Numbered from the stretch's first letter, positions 1,231 to 38,058 are shown. The stretch is 64,000 nt of DNA from Haliotis rubra (GCF_003918875.1 NW_025766984.1:930001-994000); one strand, 5' to 3'. Made by a program: numbers and translations. The notes: generated by a model from the letters alone, not told the origin.

Positions 1231-2595
1231 TCCATACTTAGAGATAGTTTGCCATGGATGCAGTTCTTTGATTTGATCAGTGAACTATGAGACTTTCAAT
1301 ATAGATTAGTCTTGATTTGAGAAGCCGCGAAAATCCGAACTCACTCACTCAAGACTGCATTAAAGTATTTATCTATCTCATTTTTGAGTGTTACCTAGGA
1401 ATATACTAGTTTTTCCTTAAACTACTGACAATATTTTTCATCCTTAGCGTGGGTAAGTGGGTGAGTAGGACGGACTTCAAGAAATGGCTTCACGCAATGT
1501 GGTTACTCGGAGGACCGAGTGGGCGGGTTGGTGGCTGGATGTGATGAGTGAGTGGAAATGGCATCACGCAATGTGGTTACTCGGAGGACCGAGTGTGTGG
1601 GTTGGTGGCTGGATGTGATGAGTGAGTGAGTGAGTGGATGGAACATCTACATCCCGGGGGTCTGTAAATAACCGACTCAAGACAAGATAACCCCTAAGTC
1701 AGTATCATGAGCAACACCAACACTGTCGACAACGACGACAACACGTAGTATCCCTGTCACCCTGTCCACCAATCCACTTTAATTACCTTCCACGAAAAGC
1801 ACCAGACAGCAAGTAACTTACAGTAACCCAAGTTAGCTTGACACGCGCACGTTGTAACCGCTCAACAATTCACACGACTCGGTCGAGACCGCCAGTTTAA
1901 TACCACGTCCTTTATAACAGAAACACATGTCTTGCCAGGTTACTGCAACAGGTGGGTTGATAAAGACGAAGCAAAGATGAAATAATCCCCGCACAATCTC
2001 TTGAGGCGATCAGAGCAAGCGAAGTGAGGAATGGCATTTGTTGTTATTAGGTCAACATTGTTTTTCATTTTTGAAACCAACAGTGTCTGTATTATCAACA
2101 CAAAATAAACAGAGTTAATAAATTTTGTTATCGGTGGTACATACATTTTAGATTTATAATCAGCGATGTGTTACCATAAATATCACAACTATCTGAGAAG
2201 ACAGGGAGTTCATGCCTTGACGTTGTCTGTTTAGCTATGGCGACTGATGCAGTAGACAGTAGTTGGCTGTTCTCTTTAGTTGGGGGAAAGTATCTTTATC
2301 GCAGACAACAGACAAGCCTTGCATTTTATTTGTAAAGCAATACTCTTAAGTTCTTAACTTGTCCCAGAGCCAGACTGATTAGAAAGGAAGCCCTGACCTC
2401 AGCAATTCTACTCTCTCTTGAGAGGCTGAGTGAGTGAGTGCCGCATGGAACATTATTTCAGTTTTATCACGGTGAGTCACCTTGACGTTGAGATGAGGAG
2501 CCCGGAGTGATGGCGACATCTGCTAGCACGGACAAAATGTTGGCCAACCTAGAAAAGTAATCAAGGTTTATATTTTCTCTAAAATCAGAACCAGA

Positions 2596-2601
2596 GTAGT
2601 G

Positions 2602-2647
<46 letters not shown>

Positions 2648-3208
2648 CAGTAGTAGTAGTGGTGTTAGTAGCAGTGGTAGCGGTAGAAGTGGTAGAAGTG
2701 GCAGTGGACAGTGGTAGCAGTAGTTGTAGTAGTAGTAGTAGTAATGGTAGTGGCGGTGGTAGCGGAAGTAGTAGTAGTAGTAGTAGTATGGTAGTGGCGG
2801 TGGTAGTGGAAGAAGTAGTAGTAGTAGCAGTAGAAGAAGTAGGATAAAAAAGTAGCAGTGTCAGTTGTAGCGTTAGTAGTAGTAGTAGTAGCGGCTGTTG
2901 CAGTTGCAGTGGTAGTGGTAGTAGTACTAGTAGTGGTAGTAGTAGGATACTAGTAAAAGTAGTGGTGGTGATAGTGGCANNNNNNNNNNNNNNNNNNNNN
3001 NNNNNNNNNNNNNNNNNNNNNNNNNNNNNNNNNNNNNNNNNNNNNNNNNNNNNNNNNNNNNNNNNNNNNNNNNNNNNNNNNNNNNNNNNNNNNNNNNNNN
3101 NNNNNNNNNNNNNNNNNNNNNNNNNNNNNNNNNNNGATATAGAGACTGGCAAATCGGTAGTAGTAGTAGTAATCCCACTCTCCTACCCAGAGTTCCAGTA
3201 GTAGTAGC
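2596..3208. repeat. (GTA)n/(GTR)n compound microsatellite containing an assembly gap (N 2980-3135)
   Basis: Direct inspection. Confidence 0.95.
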
Positions 3209-10626: not shown

Positions 10627-13600
10627 CTACTGCAACTTCTTCTTGCCCTCCTGTTTGGCACAGTATTCCTTGTACTGTGAGTCAGTGCCGAAAATCTTGT
10701 CCCACCACGTAAACGTTGAGCCGTAGTTACCGACGAAGTTCTTATGGTGGAAGTCGTGAAACTTGGCACCTGACAAAAAGGCAAAGTAATTCTGTAAGCT
10801 GCTTGTGAGGGGAAGATTACTACCTATAGTCTGTTTGCATTGAAAAAGTACCGATTAAAGTCAATTTAAACAAAAAAGTAAATTGAATAAGATGAAATTA
10901 AGATTGCGAATCCTCATAATTTTACCTTGCCAAATGAACATTTAAATCTAAAAGTTGTTTAACAAACGATCATAGTTTCAAAATCGCTATTATTGGTTTG
11001 TATGACAAGGTTGTATGCACATCAAATGAAACACCGAGAACAAGTAGAGTTGGTCTAAGTTAACGTTCATCACGAACCGCACATGCATTTGTTTCACTGT
11101 TCCATCTACTGCGCTCACTGAGATTTAAATGTTCAGTTGGCAAGGCAAATTTATGAGGATTCGCAGTCTTAATTTCACTTTATTTGATTTACTTTTTTGT
11201 TTAAAGTGAAATTCATCGGTACGTTTTCACTGCAAACAGACTATAACACACCATTAACACTTGATGCAATCTGCAGAAAATCACAATGTGTATGCATGCA
11301 TGTGCATGTTGTGTTACACCACACTCAGTAATAATTAAGCTATAGCCAAGATGGCTGAACCACTCAATCTAGTGACTGATAGCATGAGCAATAATCCAAG
11401 GTACTGTCCCATGCAATGAAACATGTCACCAAACCTGTCCTCCCAGTCCATATCATCACCACTTATGACCATCCTTGGCTGCATGAACCAATTCTACCCA
11501 GAATCCCCACCAGTTGGTTGTGATGAGTTTATTCTTAATGCCTCCCACAAACCCTTGTTAACTATGTTCGAAGTCTCACTTTCTTCACAGATACTACTGA
11601 TGTTTGCTCACCTGCGTAGAAGGGGAAGAGGTGGAAGGGGTTGAGGTAGGGGAGGTAGTAGCCACTGTGGACGTCGATGGTCTCCATCAGCCTGACTGTC
11701 ACCCACGCCCACATAAACACCATATGGTTGGTGAAGGTCAAGACTCCAATGAAGAACCCAAATCCAAGAACTGAAATGTGACATAAATTCTATCTTTTAT
11801 TCCTTTCACGATTCAGCAATGGCTGAAATCCCATGATGAAGTGTGGATGAAACAGAAGAGCAACACACAGCACTTCATCAGTGTAATGTCAGGTTTGGTT
11901 TGTTTGCACTCAGCAATATTCCAGCTATATGGCGGCGGTCTGTCGAGTCAGGACCAGAGAATCACATGATCAACAACATCAGCATCAATTTCCGCTGTTG
12001 GGATACAATAACATGTGTCAACCAAGTCAGCAGGCCTGACCACCCGATCCCGTTAGTTGCCTCTTTTGCTAAGCATGGGTTGCTGAAGATGAATTCTAAC
12101 CTGGATCTTCAAGGATCAGAGATATTTCTTCACTCTCTAAGTACATTACAAAGAAAGAACAGTTATCAGCAAGATCTGTTCACCTCTTAATGATGAGTTA
12201 GTAAATATTTCAGGCCTTATATATTTTAGTGGTTTCTGCGACCCATCAAAAACAAATGTATAGTCCTGGTCGGCAATTACATTACTGACGCTTGATAACC
12301 AACGAAGTCTTACAAGATACAGTGTCAGAATCCAGCACTATTCCAGTTGTGTACTTACTTATTGTCTCCAGTGGGTGTGCGTATTCAGCAGTCATTCCAA
12401 ACGGAGTCTGGGGACAGACAGGACATTCTCATGACGTCTATAGGAACTGTGGTATTAGTCAGGCTTTACAATTATGTTGTCAGAAAATAACAAGCATATT
12501 TATGTGCACTTGTTCCTTCAATGGCACTCTCTTTGAATTGACATATAATTATGATGGCGGTGTGTGAATATTCAAGTCTGCACAATGCAATCCAATGACT
12601 GATGTACGTGTCGATCCACACAATTAAATTCAATAAAATTCATCCATGATCAGTGGATGACTAACCATAGCCAAATAATCCTGAACCAATTACAGAAAAT
12701 ATGATTCATTTGGAGAACAATCTTGACAAAGTCATCTCCATATAAGTTACCATATTCCCCACAATAAACACCCTGGGATTTTAGAAAATTTCCAGATCTT
12801 AGATCTAGCTCTGTCTCTTTCATGTTTGCAAGGAGCACTGTGTTAATTACCAGTCTCACCTGGAAGTAATGATGAACTTTGTGGATGTACTTGTACACCC
12901 TTCTGTCATGGAGGGCCCAGTGAAGGAAGAAGTGCCAGGTGTCCTCAATGACAGCGCAGCCGAAACAACGCAGCGCCAGATTCCACCTGAAGCATCAAGT
13001 TCAACTCACTGCTCATTTCTGCCATCCTGGGTAAAAAATATGCCCCAGTCCTCCACAACTGGAGTGTAATAACACACTACCAACCGACTATGACCAACTA
13101 TGTCATACTAACTACATAGTTAATACTATTTTCTTTCAAGATGATTGCCCTCCCAAATACAGCTCTTCCAAGACTATGAAAAGTGAGTTATCAATAATAT
13201 CGCATATTAACTTTTCCGACAGAAACACGTGTAAATTTTCTCACACAACATACAAATTTAGGACTTTATTCATGGTCTGCTTCGAAATTATGTTCAGCAA
13301 AGCTCCAGATAAGATTTAGCTCATGTGGGTACTGTACCCACAGTATTTTTTTTGAGTGGGTATTATGAATGTTGAGTGGGTATTTCATTTTCCGTTACCC
13401 ACTGCTTTCAAATATGTGCGTATTTCAGTCATTTTACTCACCTAAGGTATGTTCTGCCTTATGTCATACCTAATCAAAACCAACTTAAATATAATGGAAA
13501 TGATTTCATAAAAAATCACTCATCCTATACTGACAGTACAACATTTGTCCAATACTAACAGTACAACTTGATAGCAATCGATGTCTTTTTCATTACGCAA

Positions 13601-16351
13601 GCGATTTTTATAAATATATTTCGTATGCATTTGTTTTAAACTTTTTTCGTATCTAACATTTTTAATGCGTAATTGGTACGCAACAATTATTTTTCAATGT
13701 GTAATTGGAAATTTTCTATGCGTATTTTACCTGGATACGCAGCTTATCTGGGCCTCTGGTTCAGGATGCTGTTTTGTTAGTAATCAATGCAAAATATGTT
13801 ACCAATCAAGTAATGTGATAAATATTATATTTCTTTCAGACTTTTTTGCTCAAAGTTTCGTCTCCGGTATTTATCGATAATCAATCGATATTTAGTTAAC
13901 GATGATTGATCTCTATGATATATATCAATAACCAGCCCTAATTGTGACCAAGTGAGTGAGTGAGTATGGTTCTACGCCGCTTTTAGCAATATTCCATCAA
14001 TATCACAGCAGGGGACACCAGAAATGGGCTTCACACATTATACCCATGTGGGGAATCGAACCTGGGTCTTCGGCGTGACGAGCGAACGCTTTAACCACTA
14101 GGCTACCCCACCGCCCCAATTGTGACCAAGTGTATCTGTACCTACCATGGAGGCATGCTGTCCCAGTCATACGGAATGTTGAAATATTCAGTGAAGAAAT
14201 ACGTCCCACTCATCATGGGCAGCTGAAAGCAATACATACAGTGCTATACTGGTACAAAACAATTGACCTAAGAACAACACTATTCTACATAGTTTTTCAG
14301 TTAACATACAAGTGTATGATGAATGTGCTTTTCAAACAAATAAATCAGCATTAAACAGATGAATGTGTCTTACTGATTTCAAACACCTGGTGTAAACTAA
14401 TCACATAAAAGGTTGTGCACTTTTTCTTCTCAAATTCTGTCTTGTTCTGACTATGATATAATATATCATATATTATAATATATTTTGTCTTGTTCTAACT
14501 GTGATCTTTGCTGAGGGGCATGATAGGACTTTCAACACAAGCGGCTTTACGATTCACTGAAGTATTTGGTGAATCGAATCATATCCCTTCGTGAATTCAA
14601 TTCATTAATCACAGTCACTAGAATCAAATATGCATGATTTTATATCCTTAAAGGTGTGCTTTACTTGAATTGGAATGTTATTTACCAAAATAAGATAGAA
14701 TATTTCCATGCCAGGCAGGATAATAGTCAACACTAATATATATTTAATTTGACAGTAATGGTCAAATTTCGGAACTAATTTATGCTGTCAGCATGGTTAA
14801 AACCATGTAAAAAATTTACTTTGTTATTGTTTCACTGAATAATATATCAACTGGAAACTTATTATTGTATTCATTAGCCAATATCTTTATTCGTTACCTC
14901 CTGTTCGTGATATGTATCATATTTGTATAAATATCCAACATATATACTAAAAGAATCAATCACAGAACTATAAAGTATATATATATATAGCGGAGTAGTA
15001 CCATAAAGACCCCTTGCAGTATCTGCCCAGTTGAAGTCACTTTATTTGAAGTTTCATTACTATTGGTCATTCACTGTGACTAGTGAGGTACAGAACACTC
15101 ACCTGTATACAAAAATGACTGAACAGAATAAGCTTTAGACATGTCCACTGCTTGTCAAATGTATCTGGTTTGTCCTGGTGAAGAGAATAAAACAGTATGA
15201 CAGAAGGATATTTGAGAATAACAGTGTTACCACGATTATTCCAACAGAGAGTTATCATACAGAGGATGTTGTTTATTTGTTATTCACACAAATGATGGTA
15301 ATATTGCAACTATGTTATGTTTTGTTTCACAATCCAGTAAATGTGATCAAGGATTCACACTGTAAGGGTACATATTGACCATGAACCAAGTCACGGTGTC
15401 TGACAGCATGTTTTGAGTGAGTGAGTGAGTGAGTGAGTGAGTGGGGGGATGGAGGAGTGAGTGAGTGAGTGAGTGAGTGAGTGAGTGAGTGAGCATGGAT
15501 ATGGTGTTGACAACCATAATCACGCTGGACAGGATGAAGCCATACAGCCTTCAGCCTTATACAAACATGATGAACCAGATACAGCGATGTATGGGAGGCA
15601 CTTACTGACTGGATCTTGTATCTGTTCATGAAGGGAATAAACTGGAAGATAAATGCAGGTAGACACAAGCCAAAGTACACCACCTGAAAGAGACCATATA
15701 AAGTGGATGTTAACATAGATCTAACCAGACAATGCTAATCTAAGCCTTGAGCCAACACTCAATTGGAGATACCTCACAGAGACTTATTATTTGCATCTGA
15801 ATCAAAACCTAATATTTGAAACATAAATCTTAACAGTTATGACGAGGAGCTTCTACAGAAATCTAAAACGTTTAGATTTCTGTGGAGGGTTTTCGTCATT
15901 AAGTATAGAGATTTAAGTTGCTAATAATTTAAAGTATACAGATTTATATTACTACATATAAATATCTTTTAGTATAAGGTATATTTATGCACCTCTATTT
16001 GAGACAAATTATCTTTGCTATTTTTGATAATGACTGTTTATCTGTCAGTATGTGATCAGCTCGTGATACCGTTACATCTGCTTTAAGCCAACTCAACCAA
16101 GACCGTGCTATCAAAATGACATTCTGTTTCTAATATAGAGAATTATCAGCACATGGTTTCAAAGAGTAACACTGAAGAAAAACACAATCATATGATGTCA
16201 TTACCTCGTGGACAAGCAGAGATCCCCATGTCGCGATTTGAAACTTCGTGTAGTTGTCAGTCATATGCACCCATGCCGTTCTGAAGGGGTCACGGAGAGG
16301 ATTATTCGGCAAGTAATCCAAATATTCGCTTCCCAAAGTCTCGTTTAACAT
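10627..16351 (-). CDS. MSMO1: Methylsterol monooxygenase 1 (C-4 methylsterol oxidase, ERG25 family), 283 aa. Coding exons 16351-16205, 15683-15606, 15174-15103, 14222-14146, 12986-12860, 12407-12359, 11770-11612, 10769-10627
   Basis: All introns GT-AG with matching phases; CDS 852 nt ending TAG. Translation includes [56 protein letters not shown] and [27 protein letters not shown], i.e. the three His boxes of the sterol desaturase/hydroxylase family, closely matching human MSMO1. Confidence 0.96.
10827..11243. mobile_element. MITE with ~120-bp imperfect TIRs and TA TSD, in MSMO1 last intron
   Basis: TAGTCTGTTTGCA..GAAAA.GTACCGAT...GCGAATCCTCATAA...ACATTTAAATCT is mirrored at 11121-11243; TA on both flanks. 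Confidence 0.85.
11890..12114 (-). mobile_element. Short retroposon family B
   Basis: Aligns along its length with 42870-43117. Confidence 0.82.
13955..14117 (-). mobile_element. SINE family A, 15-bp TSD AATTGTGACCAAGTG
   Basis: Full-length copy; TSD at 13940-13954 and 14118-14132. Confidence 0.9.
15415..15493. repeat. (GAGT)n tetranucleotide microsatellite in MSMO1 intron 2
   Basis: Direct inspection; same unit as the SINE tails. Confidence 0.9.
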
Positions 16352-20301: not shown

Positions 20302-21171
20302 TGGTTTGGGAATAATTACAATCACTACAATATATATTTCAAGTATTTGAGTTTCCTGTCTCACTTTTTATGAAGTTATATAATATTCAACATGTTTTAT
20401 TTGTGTAAAAGGCGTTGGTACTACAAGCAGTCTATGTGAGAAGTAAAACTGTGTTTAAGGTCCTGTTCACGATTATTTATTTATTGCACGTGTAGAGCGA
20501 CGTGCGGCGAATGTGCAAGCCCACTGAGATACCATGCTGCAGGTTAACAAGGGCAAAGGTCTATCCACTAGGGAGACTAGAAGTCTCCTGACAGATAAAC
20601 GCAAAAAGGAACAGACCATTTGATCTTGCCTAGGGTTTCTTTTCAATTTAATAAAACATATTGTTTCAGAAAAAAGTCTTTTTTCTTGTTTCCAGCATTT
20701 GCCATAATATGATGAAGATGGTAAAGTAGTCAGTTCGAACCTAACAAACTATCAGTGTAGTGTTGCTTCTAACAGAATTTACACACAAAAATATATAACA
20801 GTCAAGAAATATGATTTAATAATTCTGTGTAAACAGTTTCAGTTCAGCTGTTAATCAATATAAACCAGCTGTGGTTGTATCACCTTGGAATAAACTGCTG
20901 CAGTGTCAATAACCCAGTGCTCTCAGTTCATCTCATGAGAACAGGCTGTCATCTCACCGGCTGATGAACAAACCTTGAAAACAAACCGAGCTTCTAAAAA
21001 ATCATTTTTGTGGTTACAAACGTCCTCAGACTCAATAAAACATGCCTTGACAGCAAGGAGGTCTGTCCCTATGTTGAAGGTGGCACTGGTGGCAAGCTAC
21101 TAAGCCTGAGAGACCTTGGGTCCCCTGAGTGGTCGTATCACCTCATGGAGTTAACAGCCCCCAGACGACCA

Positions 21172-24100
21172 TTATTCTGTTGGCTTGTCAGTGGACTTCT
21201 GTTCCTGTGGTACAAGTCCTCGAATTGTCAAGTCATAAACTACTTCCTCAGATTTCTTCAAATCATATTTCAGGGCATCAAATCTTTTACGTAAACTATC
21301 ATTTTTCAAGTTCAAAAGTCTAAATCCTGAATCGAGTTCTCCCACAAATCTGGCAATTCTGACAGGCCTCCCATAATCTCCTGCAGTCACAGAGTTCACT
21401 GCTAGTCGAGACTGAAAGAGAGGAATGAGTGTATGATGTAAAGCAATGTATGAAGTGGGAGGGAGTATGTTCTCCAACACTTCAATCAGCAATATTCCAG
21501 CAGTATCACAATGCCCATTACAAAGCACACCTGTCTCACCTCAAAGAGACACTACCCCGCGTCACGTATATGCTATGTCTCAGTTTCAGTTTCAGAAGCC
21601 CTTACCCACTTCCCCCACCCTAGAAACTCACCAGTTCACTGGCCAGCTGTAACAAGCCAAAGGTCAATATGGAACTCCAGAGGCCATTACCCCCTCCCCA
21701 CCCCAGGGACTCACCAGTTCACTGGCCAGCTGTAACAAGGCAATGGTCAATATGGAACTCCAGAGGCCATTACCCCCTTCCCCCACCCCAGGAGCTCAAC
21801 AGTTCACTGGCCAGCTGTAATAAGCCAAAGGTCAATATGGAGCCCCAGAGGCCATTACCCCCTTCCCCCACCCCAGGAACTCACCGGGTCAATGGCCAGC
21901 TGTAACAAGCCAAAGGTCAATATGGAACTCCAGAGGCCATTACCCCCTTCCCCCGACCCAGGGACTCACCAGTTCACTGGCCAGCTGTAACAAGGCAATG
22001 GTCAATATGGAACTCCAGAGGCCATTACCCCCTTCCCCCACCCCAGGAGCTCAACAGTTCACTGGCCAGCTGTAATAAGCAAAAGGTCAATATGGAACCC
22101 CAGAGGCCATTACCCCCTTCCCCCACCCCAGGAACTCACCGGGTCACTGGACAGCTGTAACAAGCCAAAGGTCAATATGGAACTCCAGAGGCCATTACCC
22201 ACTTCCCCCACCCTAGAAACTCACCAGTTCACTGGCCAGCTGTAACAAGCCAAAGGTCAATATGGAACTCCAGAGGCCATTACCTCCTTCCCCCATCCCA
22301 AGAGCTCACCAGTTCACTGGCCAGCTGTAACAAGCCAAAGGTCAATATGGAACTCCAGAGGCCATTACCCCCTTCCCCCACCCCAGGAGCTCAACAGTTC
22401 ACTGGCCAGCTGTAATAAGCCAAAGGTCAATATGGAACCCCAGAGGCCATTACCCCTTTCCCCCACCCCAGGAACTCACCAGGTCACTGGACAGCTGTAA
22501 CAAGCCAAAGGTCAATATGGAACTCCAGAGGCCATTACCCACTTTCCCCACCCTAGAAACTCACCAGTTCACTGGCCAGCTGTAACAAGCCAAAGGTCAA
22601 TATGGAGCTCCAGAGGCCATTACCTCCTTCCCCCATCCCAAGAGCTCACCAGTTCACTGGCCAGCTGTAACAAGCCAAAGGTCAATATGGAGCTCCAGAG
22701 GCCATTACCCCATTCCCCCACCCAAGAAACTCACCAGTTCACTGGCCAGCTGTAATAAGCCAAAGGTCAATATGGAGCTCCAGAGGCCATTACCCCTTCC
22801 CCACCCCAGGAGCTCACCAGTTCACTGGCCAGCTGTAATAAGCCAAAGGTCAATATGGAACCCCAGAGGCCATTGTTCCCCACCCCAGGAGCTCACCGGG
22901 TCACTGGACAGCTGTAACAAGCCAAAGGTCAATATGGAGCTCCAGAGGCCATTACCCCCTTCCCCCACCCTAGGAGCTCACCAGTTCACTGGCCAGCTGT
23001 AATAAGCCAAAGGTCAATATGGAACCCCAGAGGCCATTACCCCTTCCCCACCCCAGGAGCTCACCGGGTCCTGGACAGCTGTAACCCAAAGGTCAATATG
23101 GAGCTCCAGAGGCCACCCCTTCCCTAACCCTAGAAACTCACCAGTTCACTGGCCAGCTGTAATAAGCCAAAGGTCAATATGGAACTCCAGAGGCCATTAC
23201 CCCCTTCCCCCACCCTAGAAACTCACCAGTTCACTGGCCAGCTGTAATAAGCCAAAGGTCAATATGGAACTCCAGAGGCCATTACCCCCTTCCCCCATCC
23301 CACTCACCAGTTCACTGGCCAGCCATTACAAGCCAAAGGTCAATATGGAGCCCCAGAGGCCATTACCCCCTTCCCCCACCCTAGGAACTCACCAGTTCAC
23401 TGGCCAACTGTAACAAGCCCATGAGGTAGTCGTCAAGGTCAATATGGAAACCATCACCTCGCTGCATTTTAACTGAAACAAGAATACTGAACTTACGACA
23501 CAAACAAATCTAATGCTTTGACCTGTCATTATGTTTACCTTTCTTTAATGTGCCAATAAGTACAAGCAGATAGAGAGCCAACAAACAAAACAATTGCAAT
23601 CTTATTTGAATTTGTTTCCATTAACTTAAAAACATAACAAAGTAGCCACAGAAGGACAACCGTTTCCTCATTGGCTGATAATTGAATGGGTGGGGCTTGT
23701 GTTGCATTATTGTGCAGAACAACCGCACTGATATGGTATTATAGCCTACTGTGTTTTTGTGTCAACTATAAAATAAGCAGCTATGAAGTCACTATTGTTG
23801 CTACATATATTTCTTGAGAACCAACATCAATCTTTGTTTTTGTTAAACAGGTATAAAAGTAAAAATGTACACACCTGTAGTAGATTTGCAAAAACGTGCA
23901 GTCTATATTCACCAACAAGCACACAATATTATGTTTATGTCTTCATCTATCAATGGATCCATGACTTCTATTATGACAGTGCTGTGAATAGCTGTAATAA
24001 TGCTGATCCGGACATATTTATTCATTATTATGACAATGACATGACCCACCTCCCAACATGGCTGCTGAGTCCTCCCTGGATATGAGAGCTTCCTTCTCCA

Positions 24101-26552
24101 GGTAGACGATGTACGCTGACAGACCAGTCAGTCTCTGACTCACAAATCTCCAGTGGTCATGAAATCTGAAACAGTCAGAAAAACATAGCTAGAAAACACA
24201 GCTTTGAGACCTAAGAAGAGATTGATTAATTGAATAAATTGAAGCTATCCGTGTAAGGGTTGGACACTAAATATGTCACTTACTACCAATAGTCTAGACA
24301 TCTAGCCCTTGATGTGACTAGTCTGATACGGCTAAAATAATACTGTGGCAACAACCTTTCTTGTGACAAACCAAACTCCAACTGATGGTGCATCTCATTA
24401 ATAGCTGGAATCATTTTGTACATATAGTATAGTAGTACAGTACTGTAATAAAGAGATGAGGGAGTTGGGTATAACACTGTTTGAACACTACTCAACCTTT
24501 ATAAAGCTTGTCACTTCGATATGGGACAAAACCTTGAAATGATGCAGGTCTGAAGAATTTACCACTTTGGTAAAATCCACAAGCAAGACAACCATATTGA
24601 CTTGGGATGCAACACTTTAAAGTATATTGTGAAGCTGAGATGATGAGGCCAACCATACACCAGGAACATGTTGGCATATGAGTATGATCAGCAACGAACA
24701 TTTGAGTATACTAACCGATAGTACTGATCTTGAGGCACCTTCTGGGACAGCTTACTGAACTGTTCTCGTACTCTTCCAAACCGCTCCCTTGCTTTTTCAC
24801 ACAATGTTGAGACTACATGGCAACAGATACATGAGAATTACTGACCGAAACATGAACATATGAGACAAATTCCAAGTTTAGGTTTGCGAAGCATAAAAAC
24901 AAACACTTTTCAAATTCAAATAAGTAAAATAATATACAAAAGGCATATTGAAATAGAAATAATAAAAATTACATTAACTTATCTCATTCTTAGGCTTCAG
25001 TTTAAAGTGGGGTTATTACTAAACATTTTGTCTTTGTGACTTCAGGAATGGAAATTAACCCAAAAAAACAGACAGAACTAGAAGGATGCATTCCAATATT
25101 TAACACTCAGAAAAAGTCACTGTACTGGCTTTCTGATGAGTTTTCACAGCAAAGACAATTCACGACTGAAGTCAAAATACATACTAAGCCAAAAGGTAAA
25201 CTGAATTATAATTTTGTTAGCCCAAAGTAATTCCTACCTGCCTCGGACCTATTTGGTGTTATTTTCATCCACATGCTATCATCTACCAGTCTTGTTTAGT
25301 ATCATAACATTATTACACCAAATGATAGTCAGATCATGGCTTGTCGACACCAAATAATCAAGATATGTGATCCACACACACCTTGTTGATTTATTACACT
25401 TCTAGTCTGCAGTATTATTACAACTGCACAGTACAGCACGTCAGATAAACAGAGGAATTTATTGTCAGTTTTCTTCTGATCACAACACTTACTGCTTTTG
25501 ATGCCATCTTGTTGATGGACAGATTGTAACAAAGTCTGAATTTCTCTGGCTGTTTGTTCAATATCCTTTACTTGAGACCTTATGTCCTGAAAACAAACAC
25601 ATTTATCAGTACCTAAGATGTGGGGCTTGTAGACATTGATTAATTGTGAACAATTCATATTAGTAAGTATACCCAAACCTACCATGAAATTGACATTGCA
25701 TGAACATGATGACCTAACAATACAAGTTTTTTTTAAATTTTAACCACAGTGGGAGCTAGGATTGACATCCAAACCAAAACAGAACAAGTTACAGTAAATT
25801 ATGTTTATAACGGACAGACAGATATAATAACCTGTGTTTTTTTCTGCCCCATATAATTCAGTAAATGTTCATAACGAACGGGTAACAATGCATCCTAAAT
25901 ATAGATTTTTTAAGCGTCCATGCACTAACAATCTATAATTAGTGGTTCCTTTGCAATTTGGTATAACCAGTGTCTGAAATAAGGCCCGAGACGGTCTAAA
26001 TTTCTGACGGACGGTCTAAATTTACAGCCAGCCAGCCCGATGGTCTGGTAAAAATTTGAGATGTTCCATGCATCTGTGTAAATTCACCATATTTGGTCTG
26101 GTTAAATCCATTTTGGGTTGGTAACATTTTGAAGTTACCAGCCCTGATGTCTGGCTGGATTTTTGGCTTGTTTCATACACTGATCAGATAGGTCACACTT
26201 ATAAGTTGTCCCTCCAGATGACCAACCGTTTAAGTTTTCTATTCATAGTCAACAGCTATTATCACCATCCACTACTCTATACTGTTACATAAGTGTCATT
26301 CATTAAAGACCCAAATGACTGTTGCAACTGGATGGTACAGCCATGAAGCATTCGAAAGCCCGGAAAGGTGCATGTGCCTCTAAAATCATATTGCCAATTC
26401 ACACATACAATCTACTCAATAGATCGATTTGTCAGCTTTTTCAAACAATGAAACAATTCGTGTAATTTGTGTCATGCCTCGCGAATTTCTTGCTCTTCGT
26501 TTATGTAATCTTGAAATGAAGAAAATATCTGTGAAGTTGCATCTTGTGTCAT
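21172..26552 (-). CDS. TSN: Translin (C3PO subunit), 233 aa. Coding exons 26552-26478, 25586-25493, 24812-24716, 24165-24050, 23472-23393, 21411-21172
   Basis: Spliced CDS of 702 nt: MTQDATSQIFSSFQDYINEEQEIRE...QYYRFHDHWRFVSQRL...GFHIDLDDYLMGLLQLASELSRLAVNSVTAGDYGRP...GFRLLNLKNDSLRKRFDALKYDLKKSEEVVYDLTIRG, the characteristic translin sequence. Exon phases are consistent. The first donor is GC. Confidence 0.96.
21598..23420. repeat. 85-bp minisatellite, 21 copies plus the progenitor exon5/intron5 junction of translin
   Basis: Unit CCAGTTCACTGGCCAGCTGTAACAAGCCAAAGGTCAATATGGAACTCCAGAGGCCATTACCCCCTTCCCCCACCCCAGGAACTCA starts at 21631, 21714, 21799, 21884, 21969 ... 23226, 23307, 23392. Confidence 0.97.
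25969..26182. mobile_element. MITE, TIR CAGTGT(C/A)TGAAA(T/C)AAG, in translin intron 1
   Basis: Inverted termini; no clear TSD. Confidence 0.6.
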
Positions 26553-26840
26553 GATTCGCCAGTACAAGCCCTTTATAACAAACAACTAACAACGCTTTCA
26601 GAAACCGGAAGTACACTACATGTGCGTGACTGCTCACGAAGAAGAATATTTATGTTTCGCTATCGTCCTTATTATATGCATTTGTTGACTCAGATGTAAT
26701 CAAATCATATGTCCTGGAAAAAGAACAACAATGTATATTATTTACCATAAAAAAAATATAACTTGAAGGAGGATATTGAGTGCCGAACATTCATCTTTGA
26801 CTTCCGGTATGATGAGCTCCGGTATCAAAACACAGTAACA
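26553..26840. promoter_or_regulatory. Putative bidirectional promoter TSN/RNF32
   Basis: Only ~290 bp between divergent start codons (the RNF32 start is tentative); oppositely oriented ETS/GABP-type sites CCGGAAGT (26605-26612) and ACTTCCGG (26800-26807). Confidence 0.65.

Positions 26841-38058
<11,218 letters not shown>

What the first reader, a model, noticed from the sequence alone, without database searches (positions are those of the whole stretch)
21598..23472. Translin last intron holds an amplified array of its own exon/intron junction: 21 potential in-frame 15-nt microexon cassettes
Seen: on the transcribed (-) strand each 85-bp unit reads ...GAG-TTCCATATTGACCTT-TGGCTTGTTACAG/CTGGCCAGTGAACTG/GTGAG(T/C)..GGGGTGGGGGAAGGGGGTAATGGCCTCTG. 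It copies the 3' part of exon 5 (FHIDL...GLLQLASEL) plus the donor and the start of the intron, but lacks the codons for DDYLM. That deletion places a branchpoint-like TTGAC and a T-rich tract directly before CAG, giving a plausible acceptor. Each unit therefore parses as a 70-nt GT-AG intron plus a 15-nt phase-0 exon encoding LASEL (LSSDP in some variants). 18 of 21 copies keep GTGAG; three (21799, 22054, 22394) have TTGAG. Inference: the array could give frame-preserving isoforms with variable (LASEL)n inserted in a conserved translin helix, act as recursive/stepwise splicing points or U1 decoys, or be a snapshot of intron gain by tandem duplication. It could also be inert.
Basis: partly seen in the sequence, partly recalled or inferred. 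Interest (0 to 1): 0.82.

Follow-up and report, generated by a model that had tools for sequence, protein, structure and literature searches.

The report
Splice-junction minisatellite in abalone translin intron
The last intron of the blacklip abalone translin gene holds 21 tandem copies of its own exon end plus splice donor; this is a real but already known kind of repeat, and the little RNA evidence on hand shows it being spliced out whole.

Summary
An 85-bp unit repeated 21.8 times (window 21593-23419, minus strand) copies the 3' end of translin exon 5, its donor and the first 57 bases of intron 5. All copies share a 14-nt deletion. Corrections: 16 of the 21 units, not 21, are intact CAG + 15 nt + GT cassettes, and 4 of those 16 encode LSSDP, LSSDL or LAIDP.

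The array occurs only at this locus in the genome. Contigs of three coded organisms (A; B, about 3% diverged; C, about 7%) carry multi-copy tandem units. H. asinina has two decayed copies with the same deletion. H. rufescens and H. cracherodii have none.

The RefSeq H. rubra protein and one presumed RNA contig of organism B join 23393 to 21411 directly, with no insert. A 5-residue insert would fall mid-helix between invariant E153 and R156.

Best reading: a neutral junction-spanning ("mirage", F7-type) minisatellite that evolves in concert and is removed from the first donor. The kind is known from human F7, CBS, 6-16 and LMNB2 and from amphioxus. This scan has already reported eight such arrays on other DNA of this genome. 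Rare cassette use is not excluded, because no RNA of the array-bearing species itself was laid. Interest is low to moderate.

The parts
23393..23472 (-). Translin exon 5 (80 nt; VKMQRGDGFHIDLDDYLMGLLQLASEL). Its last 42 nt are the exonic part of the founder unit.
   Evidence: Matches Pfam Translin PF01997. It is 100% identical to P0239 residues 128-154. The RNA contig of run X11 covers it and continues into exon 4. The acceptor is TTTCAG at 23473-23478.
23336..23392 (-). Authentic 5' splice site (CTG|GTGAGT) and G-rich intron start (GGGTGGGGGAAGGGGG). This is the intronic part of the founder unit (unit 0).
   Evidence: The joint 21411|23393 with GT..AG ends appears in RNA contig X11. Sequence.
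21590..23350 (-). Units 1-21 of the 85-bp junction minisatellite. Minus-strand starts are 23350, 23269, 23184, 23103, 23024, 22939, 22860, 22777, 22692, 22607, 22522, 22437, 22352, 22267, 22182, 22097, 22012, 21927, 21842, 21757 and 21674. 16 units are intact CAG+15 nt+GT cassettes. There is a higher-order 4-unit pattern: units 9-12 match units 13-16.
   Evidence: The array is found only at this locus in the 1.38-Gb assembly.
21412..21589 (-). Unique 3' tail of intron 5 with the strong acceptor CTCTCTTTCAG. It is orthologous to the intron tail of H. asinina (85% identity).
   Evidence: Positions 21465-21513 inside it are a fragment of a very abundant dispersed repeat (word depth about 13,000 against 139).
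21172..21411 (-). Last coding exon of translin (SRLAVNSV...DKPTE, stop at 21172-21174).
   Evidence: Pfam Translin E=2.4e-24. 100% identical to P0239 residues 155-232. ORF end.

Best explanation
This is a junction-spanning ('mirage' or F7-type) intronic minisatellite.

Proposed history:
1. A roughly 99-bp piece spanning the end of exon 5 and the start of intron 5 of translin was duplicated in tandem.
2. The duplicate lost 14 nt.
3. This happened before the H. rubra and H. asinina lineages split.
4. In the lineage of H. rubra and its close relatives, the 85-bp copy was amplified to about 21 units by unequal exchange or slippage, and it keeps being homogenised.

The pseudo-donors and pseudo-acceptors are by-products of the copied exon and intron sequence. 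The acceptor-like TTGAC...TTACAG is simply the codons for FHIDL and GLLQ brought together by the deletion.

During splicing, the first donor downstream of the well-defined 80-nt exon 5 pairs with the strong acceptor of the last exon. The whole 1.98-kb intron, array included, is removed. The 15-nt pseudo-exons are too short to be defined as exons and are skipped. The array has no function of its own.

Shown: the anatomy, locus uniqueness, taxonomic spread, decay in H. asinina, and the direct exon 5-exon 6 joint in one presumed RNA contig and in the gene model. Inferred: the order of events, concerted evolution, and why the pseudo-sites stay silent.
For: - Array and unit structure.
- Only this locus matches in the own genome.
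- All 21 rubra units and both extra H. asinina copies share the same 14-nt deletion plus a G>T change, so they have one origin.
- H. rufescens and H. cracherodii have introns of 887 and 931 bp with no copy.
- The rubra array consensus is 95.3% identical to the true junction. The asinina copies are only 73-74% identical to theirs.
- Rubra units show a higher-order pattern. Units 9/13, 12/16 and 12/19 differ by 1 base; units 10/14, 11/15 and 17/20 differ by 2. This is typical tandem-array turnover.
- Splice-like features are not protected: 1 acceptor is lost, 3 donors are lost, 1 unit is frameshifted, and 4 of the 16 intact cassettes have Ser/Asp/Pro-type replacements.
- RNA: a 1006-nt contig of run X11 (organism B, kind guessed as RNA) joins 21411|23393 with no letters between.
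- DNA contigs of organism B and organism C break at the array edges. They include short unit-to-unit contigs at 2-6 times the flank depth.
- RefSeq XP_046575318.1 (P0239) reads LASEL|SRLAV, and no isoform is on record.
- The junction lies mid-helix (residues 140-163, high pLDDT) between invariant E153 and R156, so inclusion would probably be harmful.
- Precedent: in human F7, LMNB2 and PDGF only the first of many identical donors is used (PMC1557585). Amphioxus 'mirages' do not disturb splicing and show concerted evolution with diverged edge units (PMC3087553).
Against: - No RNA run of H. rubra itself was on offer.
- The one RNA-like data set is assembled contigs, which drop rare isoforms. Its RNA nature is a guess by the tool.
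- 18 pseudo-donors are identical to the true one from -6 to +5. 16 cassettes have a plausible branch point (TTGAC, A at -18), a moderate pyrimidine tract and CAG, so occasional use is mechanically possible.
- In human 6-16 and CBS, two pseudo-donors of such arrays are used (PMC1557585).
- The high similarity of the array to the true junction could in principle reflect selection rather than homogenisation.
Confidence: 0.8

Rival explanations
1. The array is a low-level source of aberrant or regulatory splicing. Some transcripts use internal donors or cassettes. Most such products either carry a stop codon (GTG AGT TCC TAG follows LASEL when intron sequence is retained) or carry a disruptive insert. 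The array would then slightly lower or tune translin output, or act as a sink for U1 and for proteins that bind G-runs.
For: - 18 donors are identical to the authentic one, and 16 cassettes are intact.
- There are three G-runs per unit, with G skew +0.31 on the sense strand.
- Two pseudo-donors are used constitutively in human 6-16 and CBS (PMC1557585).
- The array has persisted in at least three related taxa.
Against: - The only RNA-like contig and the gene model show the canonical joint alone.
- Contigs cannot show rare forms either way.
- Nothing shows an effect on expression.
- H. rufescens and H. cracherodii do without the array, and their translins are 97% identical to that of H. rubra.
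Confidence: 0.13
2. The array is a functional microexon cassette that produces translin isoforms with (LASEL)n inserted in helix 140-163.
For: Phase 0, 15 nt, no stop codon, and 12 cassettes encoding exactly LASEL.
Against: - No such protein or isoform exists among the abalone translin cluster, whose 4 members are all 233 aa.
- The RNA contig has no insert.
- Variants encode proline or shift the frame.
- The copies decay in H. asinina and are absent in two other abalones.
- The insert would separate invariant E153 and R156 in mid-helix and turn the rest of the helix by about 140 degrees (geometry from general knowledge).
Confidence: 0.04
3. The array is an assembly artefact: a collapsed or inflated repeat.
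For: Repeats of this size are error-prone in draft assemblies. No read or contig laid here spans the whole array.
Against: - Logan contigs of organism A reach into both edges with 0 mismatches. Short unit contigs match internal variants exactly, at raised depth.
- Organisms B and C, from other studies, have unit-to-unit contigs as well.
- H. asinina has relic copies in an independent chromosome-level assembly.
- The exact copy number remains unverified.
Confidence: 0.03

Closest known systems
Human F7 intron 7 37-bp VNTR (Borensztajn et al. 2006, PMC1557585)
   Same: The first monomer of the minisatellite spans the exon/intron boundary, so the authentic donor is followed by identical pseudo-donors. 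Only the most upstream donor is used.
   Different: The F7 monomer holds 4 exonic nt, with 5-9 copies and no acceptor-like site. Here the unit holds 28 exonic nt, there are 21 copies, and a deletion created an acceptor-like CAG 15 nt before each donor. Silence of the pseudo-sites is shown experimentally for F7. Here it rests on one contig and a gene model.
Human LMNB2 (100 bp x 10-15) and PDGF intron 4 (81 bp x 16-18) junction repeats, as listed in PMC1557585
   Same: Similar unit length and copy number. The repeat reiterates the exon/intron junction and fills most of an intron. Only the authentic donor is used.
   Different: Different genes and phylum. I read only the summary in PMC1557585, not the primary papers.
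Human 6-16 (IFI6) 12-nt and CBS 31-bp junction minisatellites, as listed in PMC1557585
   Same: The exon/intron junction is amplified, giving many identical donors.
   Different: In those genes the two most proximal pseudo-donors are used, giving in-frame variants. No such use is seen here.
Amphioxus 'mirage' minisatellites (Adh3, globins; Ebner et al. 2010, PMC3087553)
   Same: [quoted passage not shown] Many units keep AG/GT signals, yet regular splicing is undisturbed. Evolution is concerted, with edge units left out. They have been discussed as raw material for intron gain.
   Different: Different phylum and genes. The amphioxus units are 10-160 bp, and length polymorphism and somatic instability have been shown. 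Polymorphism was not tested here.
Other junction minisatellites reported by this scan in the same abalone genome (sacsin-like, RyR, LRRK2-like, GALM, cellulase, CFAP47 and others)
   Same: Same genome and same kind: exon end plus donor amplified inside the following intron.
   Different: Those notes are unchecked by me. From their summaries, the translin array is unusual in pairing an acceptor-like site with each donor so that units parse as 15-nt in-frame cassettes.

Membership tests
Junction-spanning ('mirage' / F7-type) minisatellite | Head-to-tail tandem array with a unit in the minisatellite range (10-100+ bp) | tested here: met
   85 bp x 21.8 copies, 88% matches.
Junction-spanning ('mirage' / F7-type) minisatellite | The first monomer is the authentic exon-intron boundary, so the splice site is reiterated in the intron | tested here: met
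   Unit 0 is the end of exon 5 plus GTGAGT and the intron start. 18 of 21 units repeat CTG|GTGAG exactly. The boundary is fixed by the RNA contig joint and by P0239.
Junction-spanning ('mirage' / F7-type) minisatellite | Regular splicing uses the authentic site; the pseudo-sites stay silent | tested here: inconclusive
   One presumed RNA contig of a related array-bearing organism and the RefSeq model show only 23393>21411. There were no raw RNA reads and no RNA of H. rubra itself.
Junction-spanning ('mirage' / F7-type) minisatellite | Array turnover: concerted evolution, diverged edge units, copy number differing between taxa | tested here: met
   Higher-order 4-unit pattern. Edge units 1 and 21 are among the most diverged. 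There are 21 units in H. rubra, 2 decayed units in H. asinina, and 0 in H. rufescens and H. cracherodii.
Junction-spanning ('mirage' / F7-type) minisatellite | Length polymorphism between individuals (VNTR) | not tested
   Only one run of organism A was laid, and contigs cannot size the array.
Alternatively spliced microexon cassette | Inclusion of the exon in mature mRNA | tested here: not met
   The RNA contig has no insert (record positions 533/534 are contiguous). All four abalone translins on record are 233 aa. The data are weak for rare forms.
Alternatively spliced microexon cassette | Conservation of length, frame and coding sense across copies and species | tested here: not met
   14-nt variant, LSSDP/LSSDL/LAIDP variants, lost AG and GT. 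The asinina copies read CTAGCCAGAGAAATG without an AG, and CTGGCCAGAGAAGTG with a GTGGGT donor.
Recursive splice site (zero-length) | A 3' splice site directly followed by a regenerated 5' splice site (YAG|GTRAGT) | tested here: not met
   Acceptor and donor are 15 nt apart. Joining exon 5 (..GAACTG) to CTGGCC regenerates no GT.
Translin (PF01997), host gene | Pfam Translin domain and orthology to annotated translins | tested here: met
   The exons match PF01997. They are 100% identical to XP_046575318.1 of H. rubra.

The most novel reading that the evidence does not exclude
In some tissue or condition (for example testis or neurons, where translin acts and microexons are favoured), abalone spliceosomes might use the 70-nt mini-introns by intron definition. 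That would give translin variants with one or more LASEL inserts, or would route transcripts to decay. The array would then be a copy-number-dependent dial on translin output, kept similar to the true junction by selection rather than by homogenisation alone.
Probability: 0.08. Interest if true: 0.7.

Novelty: new member of a known kind. Interest (0 to 1): 0.3.

Why it matters
The array is a clean natural test case for splice-site choice outside vertebrates. It places 18 donors identical to the real one, and 16 complete mini-exon cassettes, between a true donor and its acceptor, yet the mature message appears to ignore them. The other junction arrays this scan has reported in the same genome suggest that abalones, like amphioxus, are prone to amplifying splice junctions. 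That bears on how minisatellites are seeded and on the old idea that such repeats can give rise to new introns or exons. For translin itself nothing suggests a change of function. The array could also serve as a length-variable marker separating abalone lineages.

Tried and rejected
- Searching the last exon alone (121-aa open frame) in the protein word index found only 60-90% identical fragments and no abalone. I reached the abalone proteins instead through a Mytilus translin hit and its cluster.
- The look-up of encoding contigs holds no record for the H. rubra protein itself.
- The search for sequencing runs listed no run on record as RNA, and none of organism A guessed as RNA. Splicing in the array-bearing source species could therefore not be read. 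Only contigs, not raw reads, were laid.
- Rfam found no RNA family in 20500-27000.
- The ORF list over 21500-23500 shows only five + strand frames of 64-78 aa besides the exon 6 frame. The unit has stops in every minus-strand frame.
- G-quadruplex idea: only 1 strict and 6 relaxed G3 motifs in 1.8 kb. RNA folding of three units is about 1.8 SD below mononucleotide shuffles. This is not remarkable, so I dropped it as an explanation.
- Zero-length recursive splicing was rejected on sequence.
- Origin of the deletion by ACCT microhomology was rejected. It would remove 12 nt and leave ACCTCATGGG, which is not what is seen.
- Copy number from contig depth was not attempted, because the tool warns that depth is not a copy number.
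The effect of an insert was judged only from the position of the junction in the model of the public protein P0239.
- Literature searches for abalone minisatellites and for the CBS VNTR gave nothing useful.

Full report
**What is there**

On the minus strand of the window lies a translin gene. Its exons match Pfam Translin. They are 100% identical to the public protein XP_046575318.1, translin-like of Haliotis rubra (P0239). This also confirms the earlier notes that the genome is blacklip abalone.

- Exon 5 is 23393-23472 (80 nt).
- The last coding exon is 21175-21411, with the stop at 21172-21174.
- Intron 5 is 1981 nt.

Tandem Repeats Finder reports one array at 21593-23419: period 85, 21.8 copies, 88% matches, score 2842. 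It is by far the strongest repeat in the 64-kb window.

**Unit anatomy**

I split the array at the conserved CCATATTGACC motif and aligned the units.

- Unit 0 is the real thing: the last 42 nt of exon 5, the donor CTG|GTGAGT, and 57 nt of G-rich intron.
- Units 1-21 repeat it, less 14 nt of the DDYLM codons and with one G>T change.
- 18 units carry a donor identical to the true one from -6 to +5.
- 20 units carry TTACAG 15 nt (14 nt in unit 4) upstream of the donor position. A TTGAC lies before it, with its A at -18.

The claim of 21 in-frame cassettes is too generous.

- Unit 1 has no AG.
- The 'exon' of unit 4 is 14 nt.
- Three units lack GT.
- That leaves 16 intact cassettes: 12 LASEL and 4 LSSDP, LSSDL or LAIDP.

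**Is it real and where else is it?**

A search of the whole 1.38-Gb assembly with two units finds only this locus.

I laid Logan contigs of four public runs on 21100-23550.

- Organism A, the likely source species: flank contigs enter both array edges without mismatch. Short internal contigs match at raised depth.
- Organism B, about 3% diverged in the intron tail: flank contigs break at the array edges. Unit-to-unit contigs have 2.5-6 times the flank depth.
- Organism C, about 7% diverged: flank contigs also break at the edges. Unit-to-unit contigs have 2-2.7 times the flank depth.

So tandem units exist in at least three taxa from separate studies. The exact copy number in H. rubra remains unverified, because nothing laid spans the array.

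Through the public abalone translin proteins I fetched three more genomic loci.

- H. rufescens: intron 5 is 887 bp, with no copy.
- H. cracherodii: intron 5 is 931 bp, with no copy.
- H. asinina: intron 5 is 457 bp, with two extra copies directly after the true junction (L012 10121-10205 and 10206-10290). Both carry the same 14-nt deletion and the same G>T change.

The founding duplication and the deletion therefore predate the rubra-asinina split.

**How it evolves**

- The rubra array consensus is 95.3% identical to the true rubra junction.
- The asinina copies are only 73-74% identical to theirs.
- The two true junctions are 87% identical to each other.

Rubra units fall into a few types arranged in a higher-order pattern.

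- Units 9-12 recur as 13-16. Unit pairs 9/13 and 12/16 differ by 1 base; pairs 10/14 and 11/15 differ by 2.
- Further near-identical pairs are 12/19 (1 base) and 17/20 (2 bases).
- The edge units 1 and 21 are among the most diverged.

This is the usual signature of turnover by unequal exchange with homogenisation. Ebner et al. describe the same for amphioxus 'mirage' arrays (PMC3087553).

One detail fits an old origin. All array units keep CAG|CTGG, the state of the true exon in H. asinina and H. rufescens. The true exon of organisms A, B and C has the synonymous TTGG.

The splice-like features are not protected. There are lost AG and GT sites, a frameshifted unit and proline-bearing variants in H. 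rubra. In H. asinina one copy has lost its AG, and the other has its donor weakened to GTGGGT.

**Is it spliced?**

One 1006-nt contig of run X11 (organism B; the tool only guesses that the run is RNA) runs through the last exon. It jumps from 21411 to 23393, with GT..AG ends and no letters between. It then covers exon 5 and continues into the end of exon 4.

The RefSeq model for H. rubra reads LASEL|SRLAV. The cluster of abalone translins has four members, all of 233 aa, and no longer form appeared in a further search.

These data show the main product. They cannot exclude rare products, because contigs drop minor variants and no RNA run of H. rubra was offered.

**Would an insert be tolerated?**

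An AlphaFold model of P0239 built with 34 translins has mean pLDDT 92. It puts the L154|S155 junction in the middle of helix 140-163. E153 and R156 are invariant across the 34 sequences.

Five extra residues would lengthen the helix and turn everything after it by about 140 degrees (general helix geometry). That would probably be harmful.

**Mechanism**

The best reading has the first donor after the well-defined 80-nt exon 5 pairing with the strong acceptor CTCTCTTTCAG of the last exon, so that the array leaves with the intron. This is what was shown by mutagenesis for human F7, where identical pseudo-donors in a 37-bp junction VNTR are functional but never compete with the most upstream site. 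It was also observed for LMNB2 and PDGF (PMC1557585).

Three further points are inference:

- A 15-nt pseudo-exon is too short for exon definition.
- The pseudo-acceptor tract (11 of 16 pyrimidines, interrupted by G) is weaker than the gene's real acceptors.
- Any use of an internal donor alone would retain intron sequence with a TAG three codons after LASEL.

Zero-length recursive splicing is excluded on sequence.

G-quadruplex or RNA-structure explanations found little support. No Rfam family overlies the array. Apart from the exon 6 frame, the ORF list shows only five + strand frames of 64-78 aa.

**Comparison and novelty**

Minisatellites whose first monomer spans an exon-intron boundary are a described class.

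- Human F7, CBS, 6-16, LMNB2 and PDGF (PMC1557585).
- Amphioxus 'mirages', which have also been discussed as a route to intron gain (PMC3087553).
- This scan has already reported eight such arrays on other DNA of this same abalone genome (those notes are unchecked by me).

The translin array is a new member of the class. Its one unusual trait is that a deletion created an acceptor-like site before each donor, so most units parse as in-frame 15-nt cassettes.

**Verdict**

- The functional readings are not supported, though not fully excluded.
- The most likely state is a tolerated, concertedly evolving minisatellite.

Noticed in passing
window 26470-26480 (minus strand); L011, L012, L013 orthologous sites: Intron 1 of translin starts GAG|GCATGA, a GC-AG intron with a poor-looking donor. 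It is conserved letter for letter in H. rubra, H. rufescens, H. asinina and H. cracherodii.
   Followed up: partly
window 21465-21513: About 49 bases in the unique tail of intron 5 belong to a very abundant dispersed repeat. Word depth is about 13,000 against 139 for the flanks in organism A, and similarly high in organisms B and C. Loose ends run in many directions. Several open frames elsewhere in the window translate to similar peptides, for example [14 protein letters not shown] and [32 protein letters not shown], which points to a SINE-like element.
   Followed up: no
L011 13900-14100; L013 9950-10150: In H. rufescens and H. cracherodii, intron 5 diverges from the rubra/asinina sequence about 25 nt after the donor. 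It then runs into a repeat-like segment with a 22-bp x 2 tandem duplication. This may be an insertion that replaced or predates the G-rich start seen in H. rubra.
   Followed up: no
window 2595-2963 and 2980-3135: A 124-copy AGT microsatellite lies directly beside the masked N run.
   Followed up: no
window 15350-15550 (minus strand): Open frames here read (THSL)n repeats such as [13 protein letters not shown]. It is a short tetrapeptide-like tandem DNA repeat of unknown context.
   Followed up: no
L011/L012/L013 flanks: Gene order is conserved in three abalone genomes: RING-finger gene (minus strand), translin, fatty-acid hydroxylase (PF04116). The window shows a matching hydroxylase-like frame near 12653-12994.
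   Followed up: no
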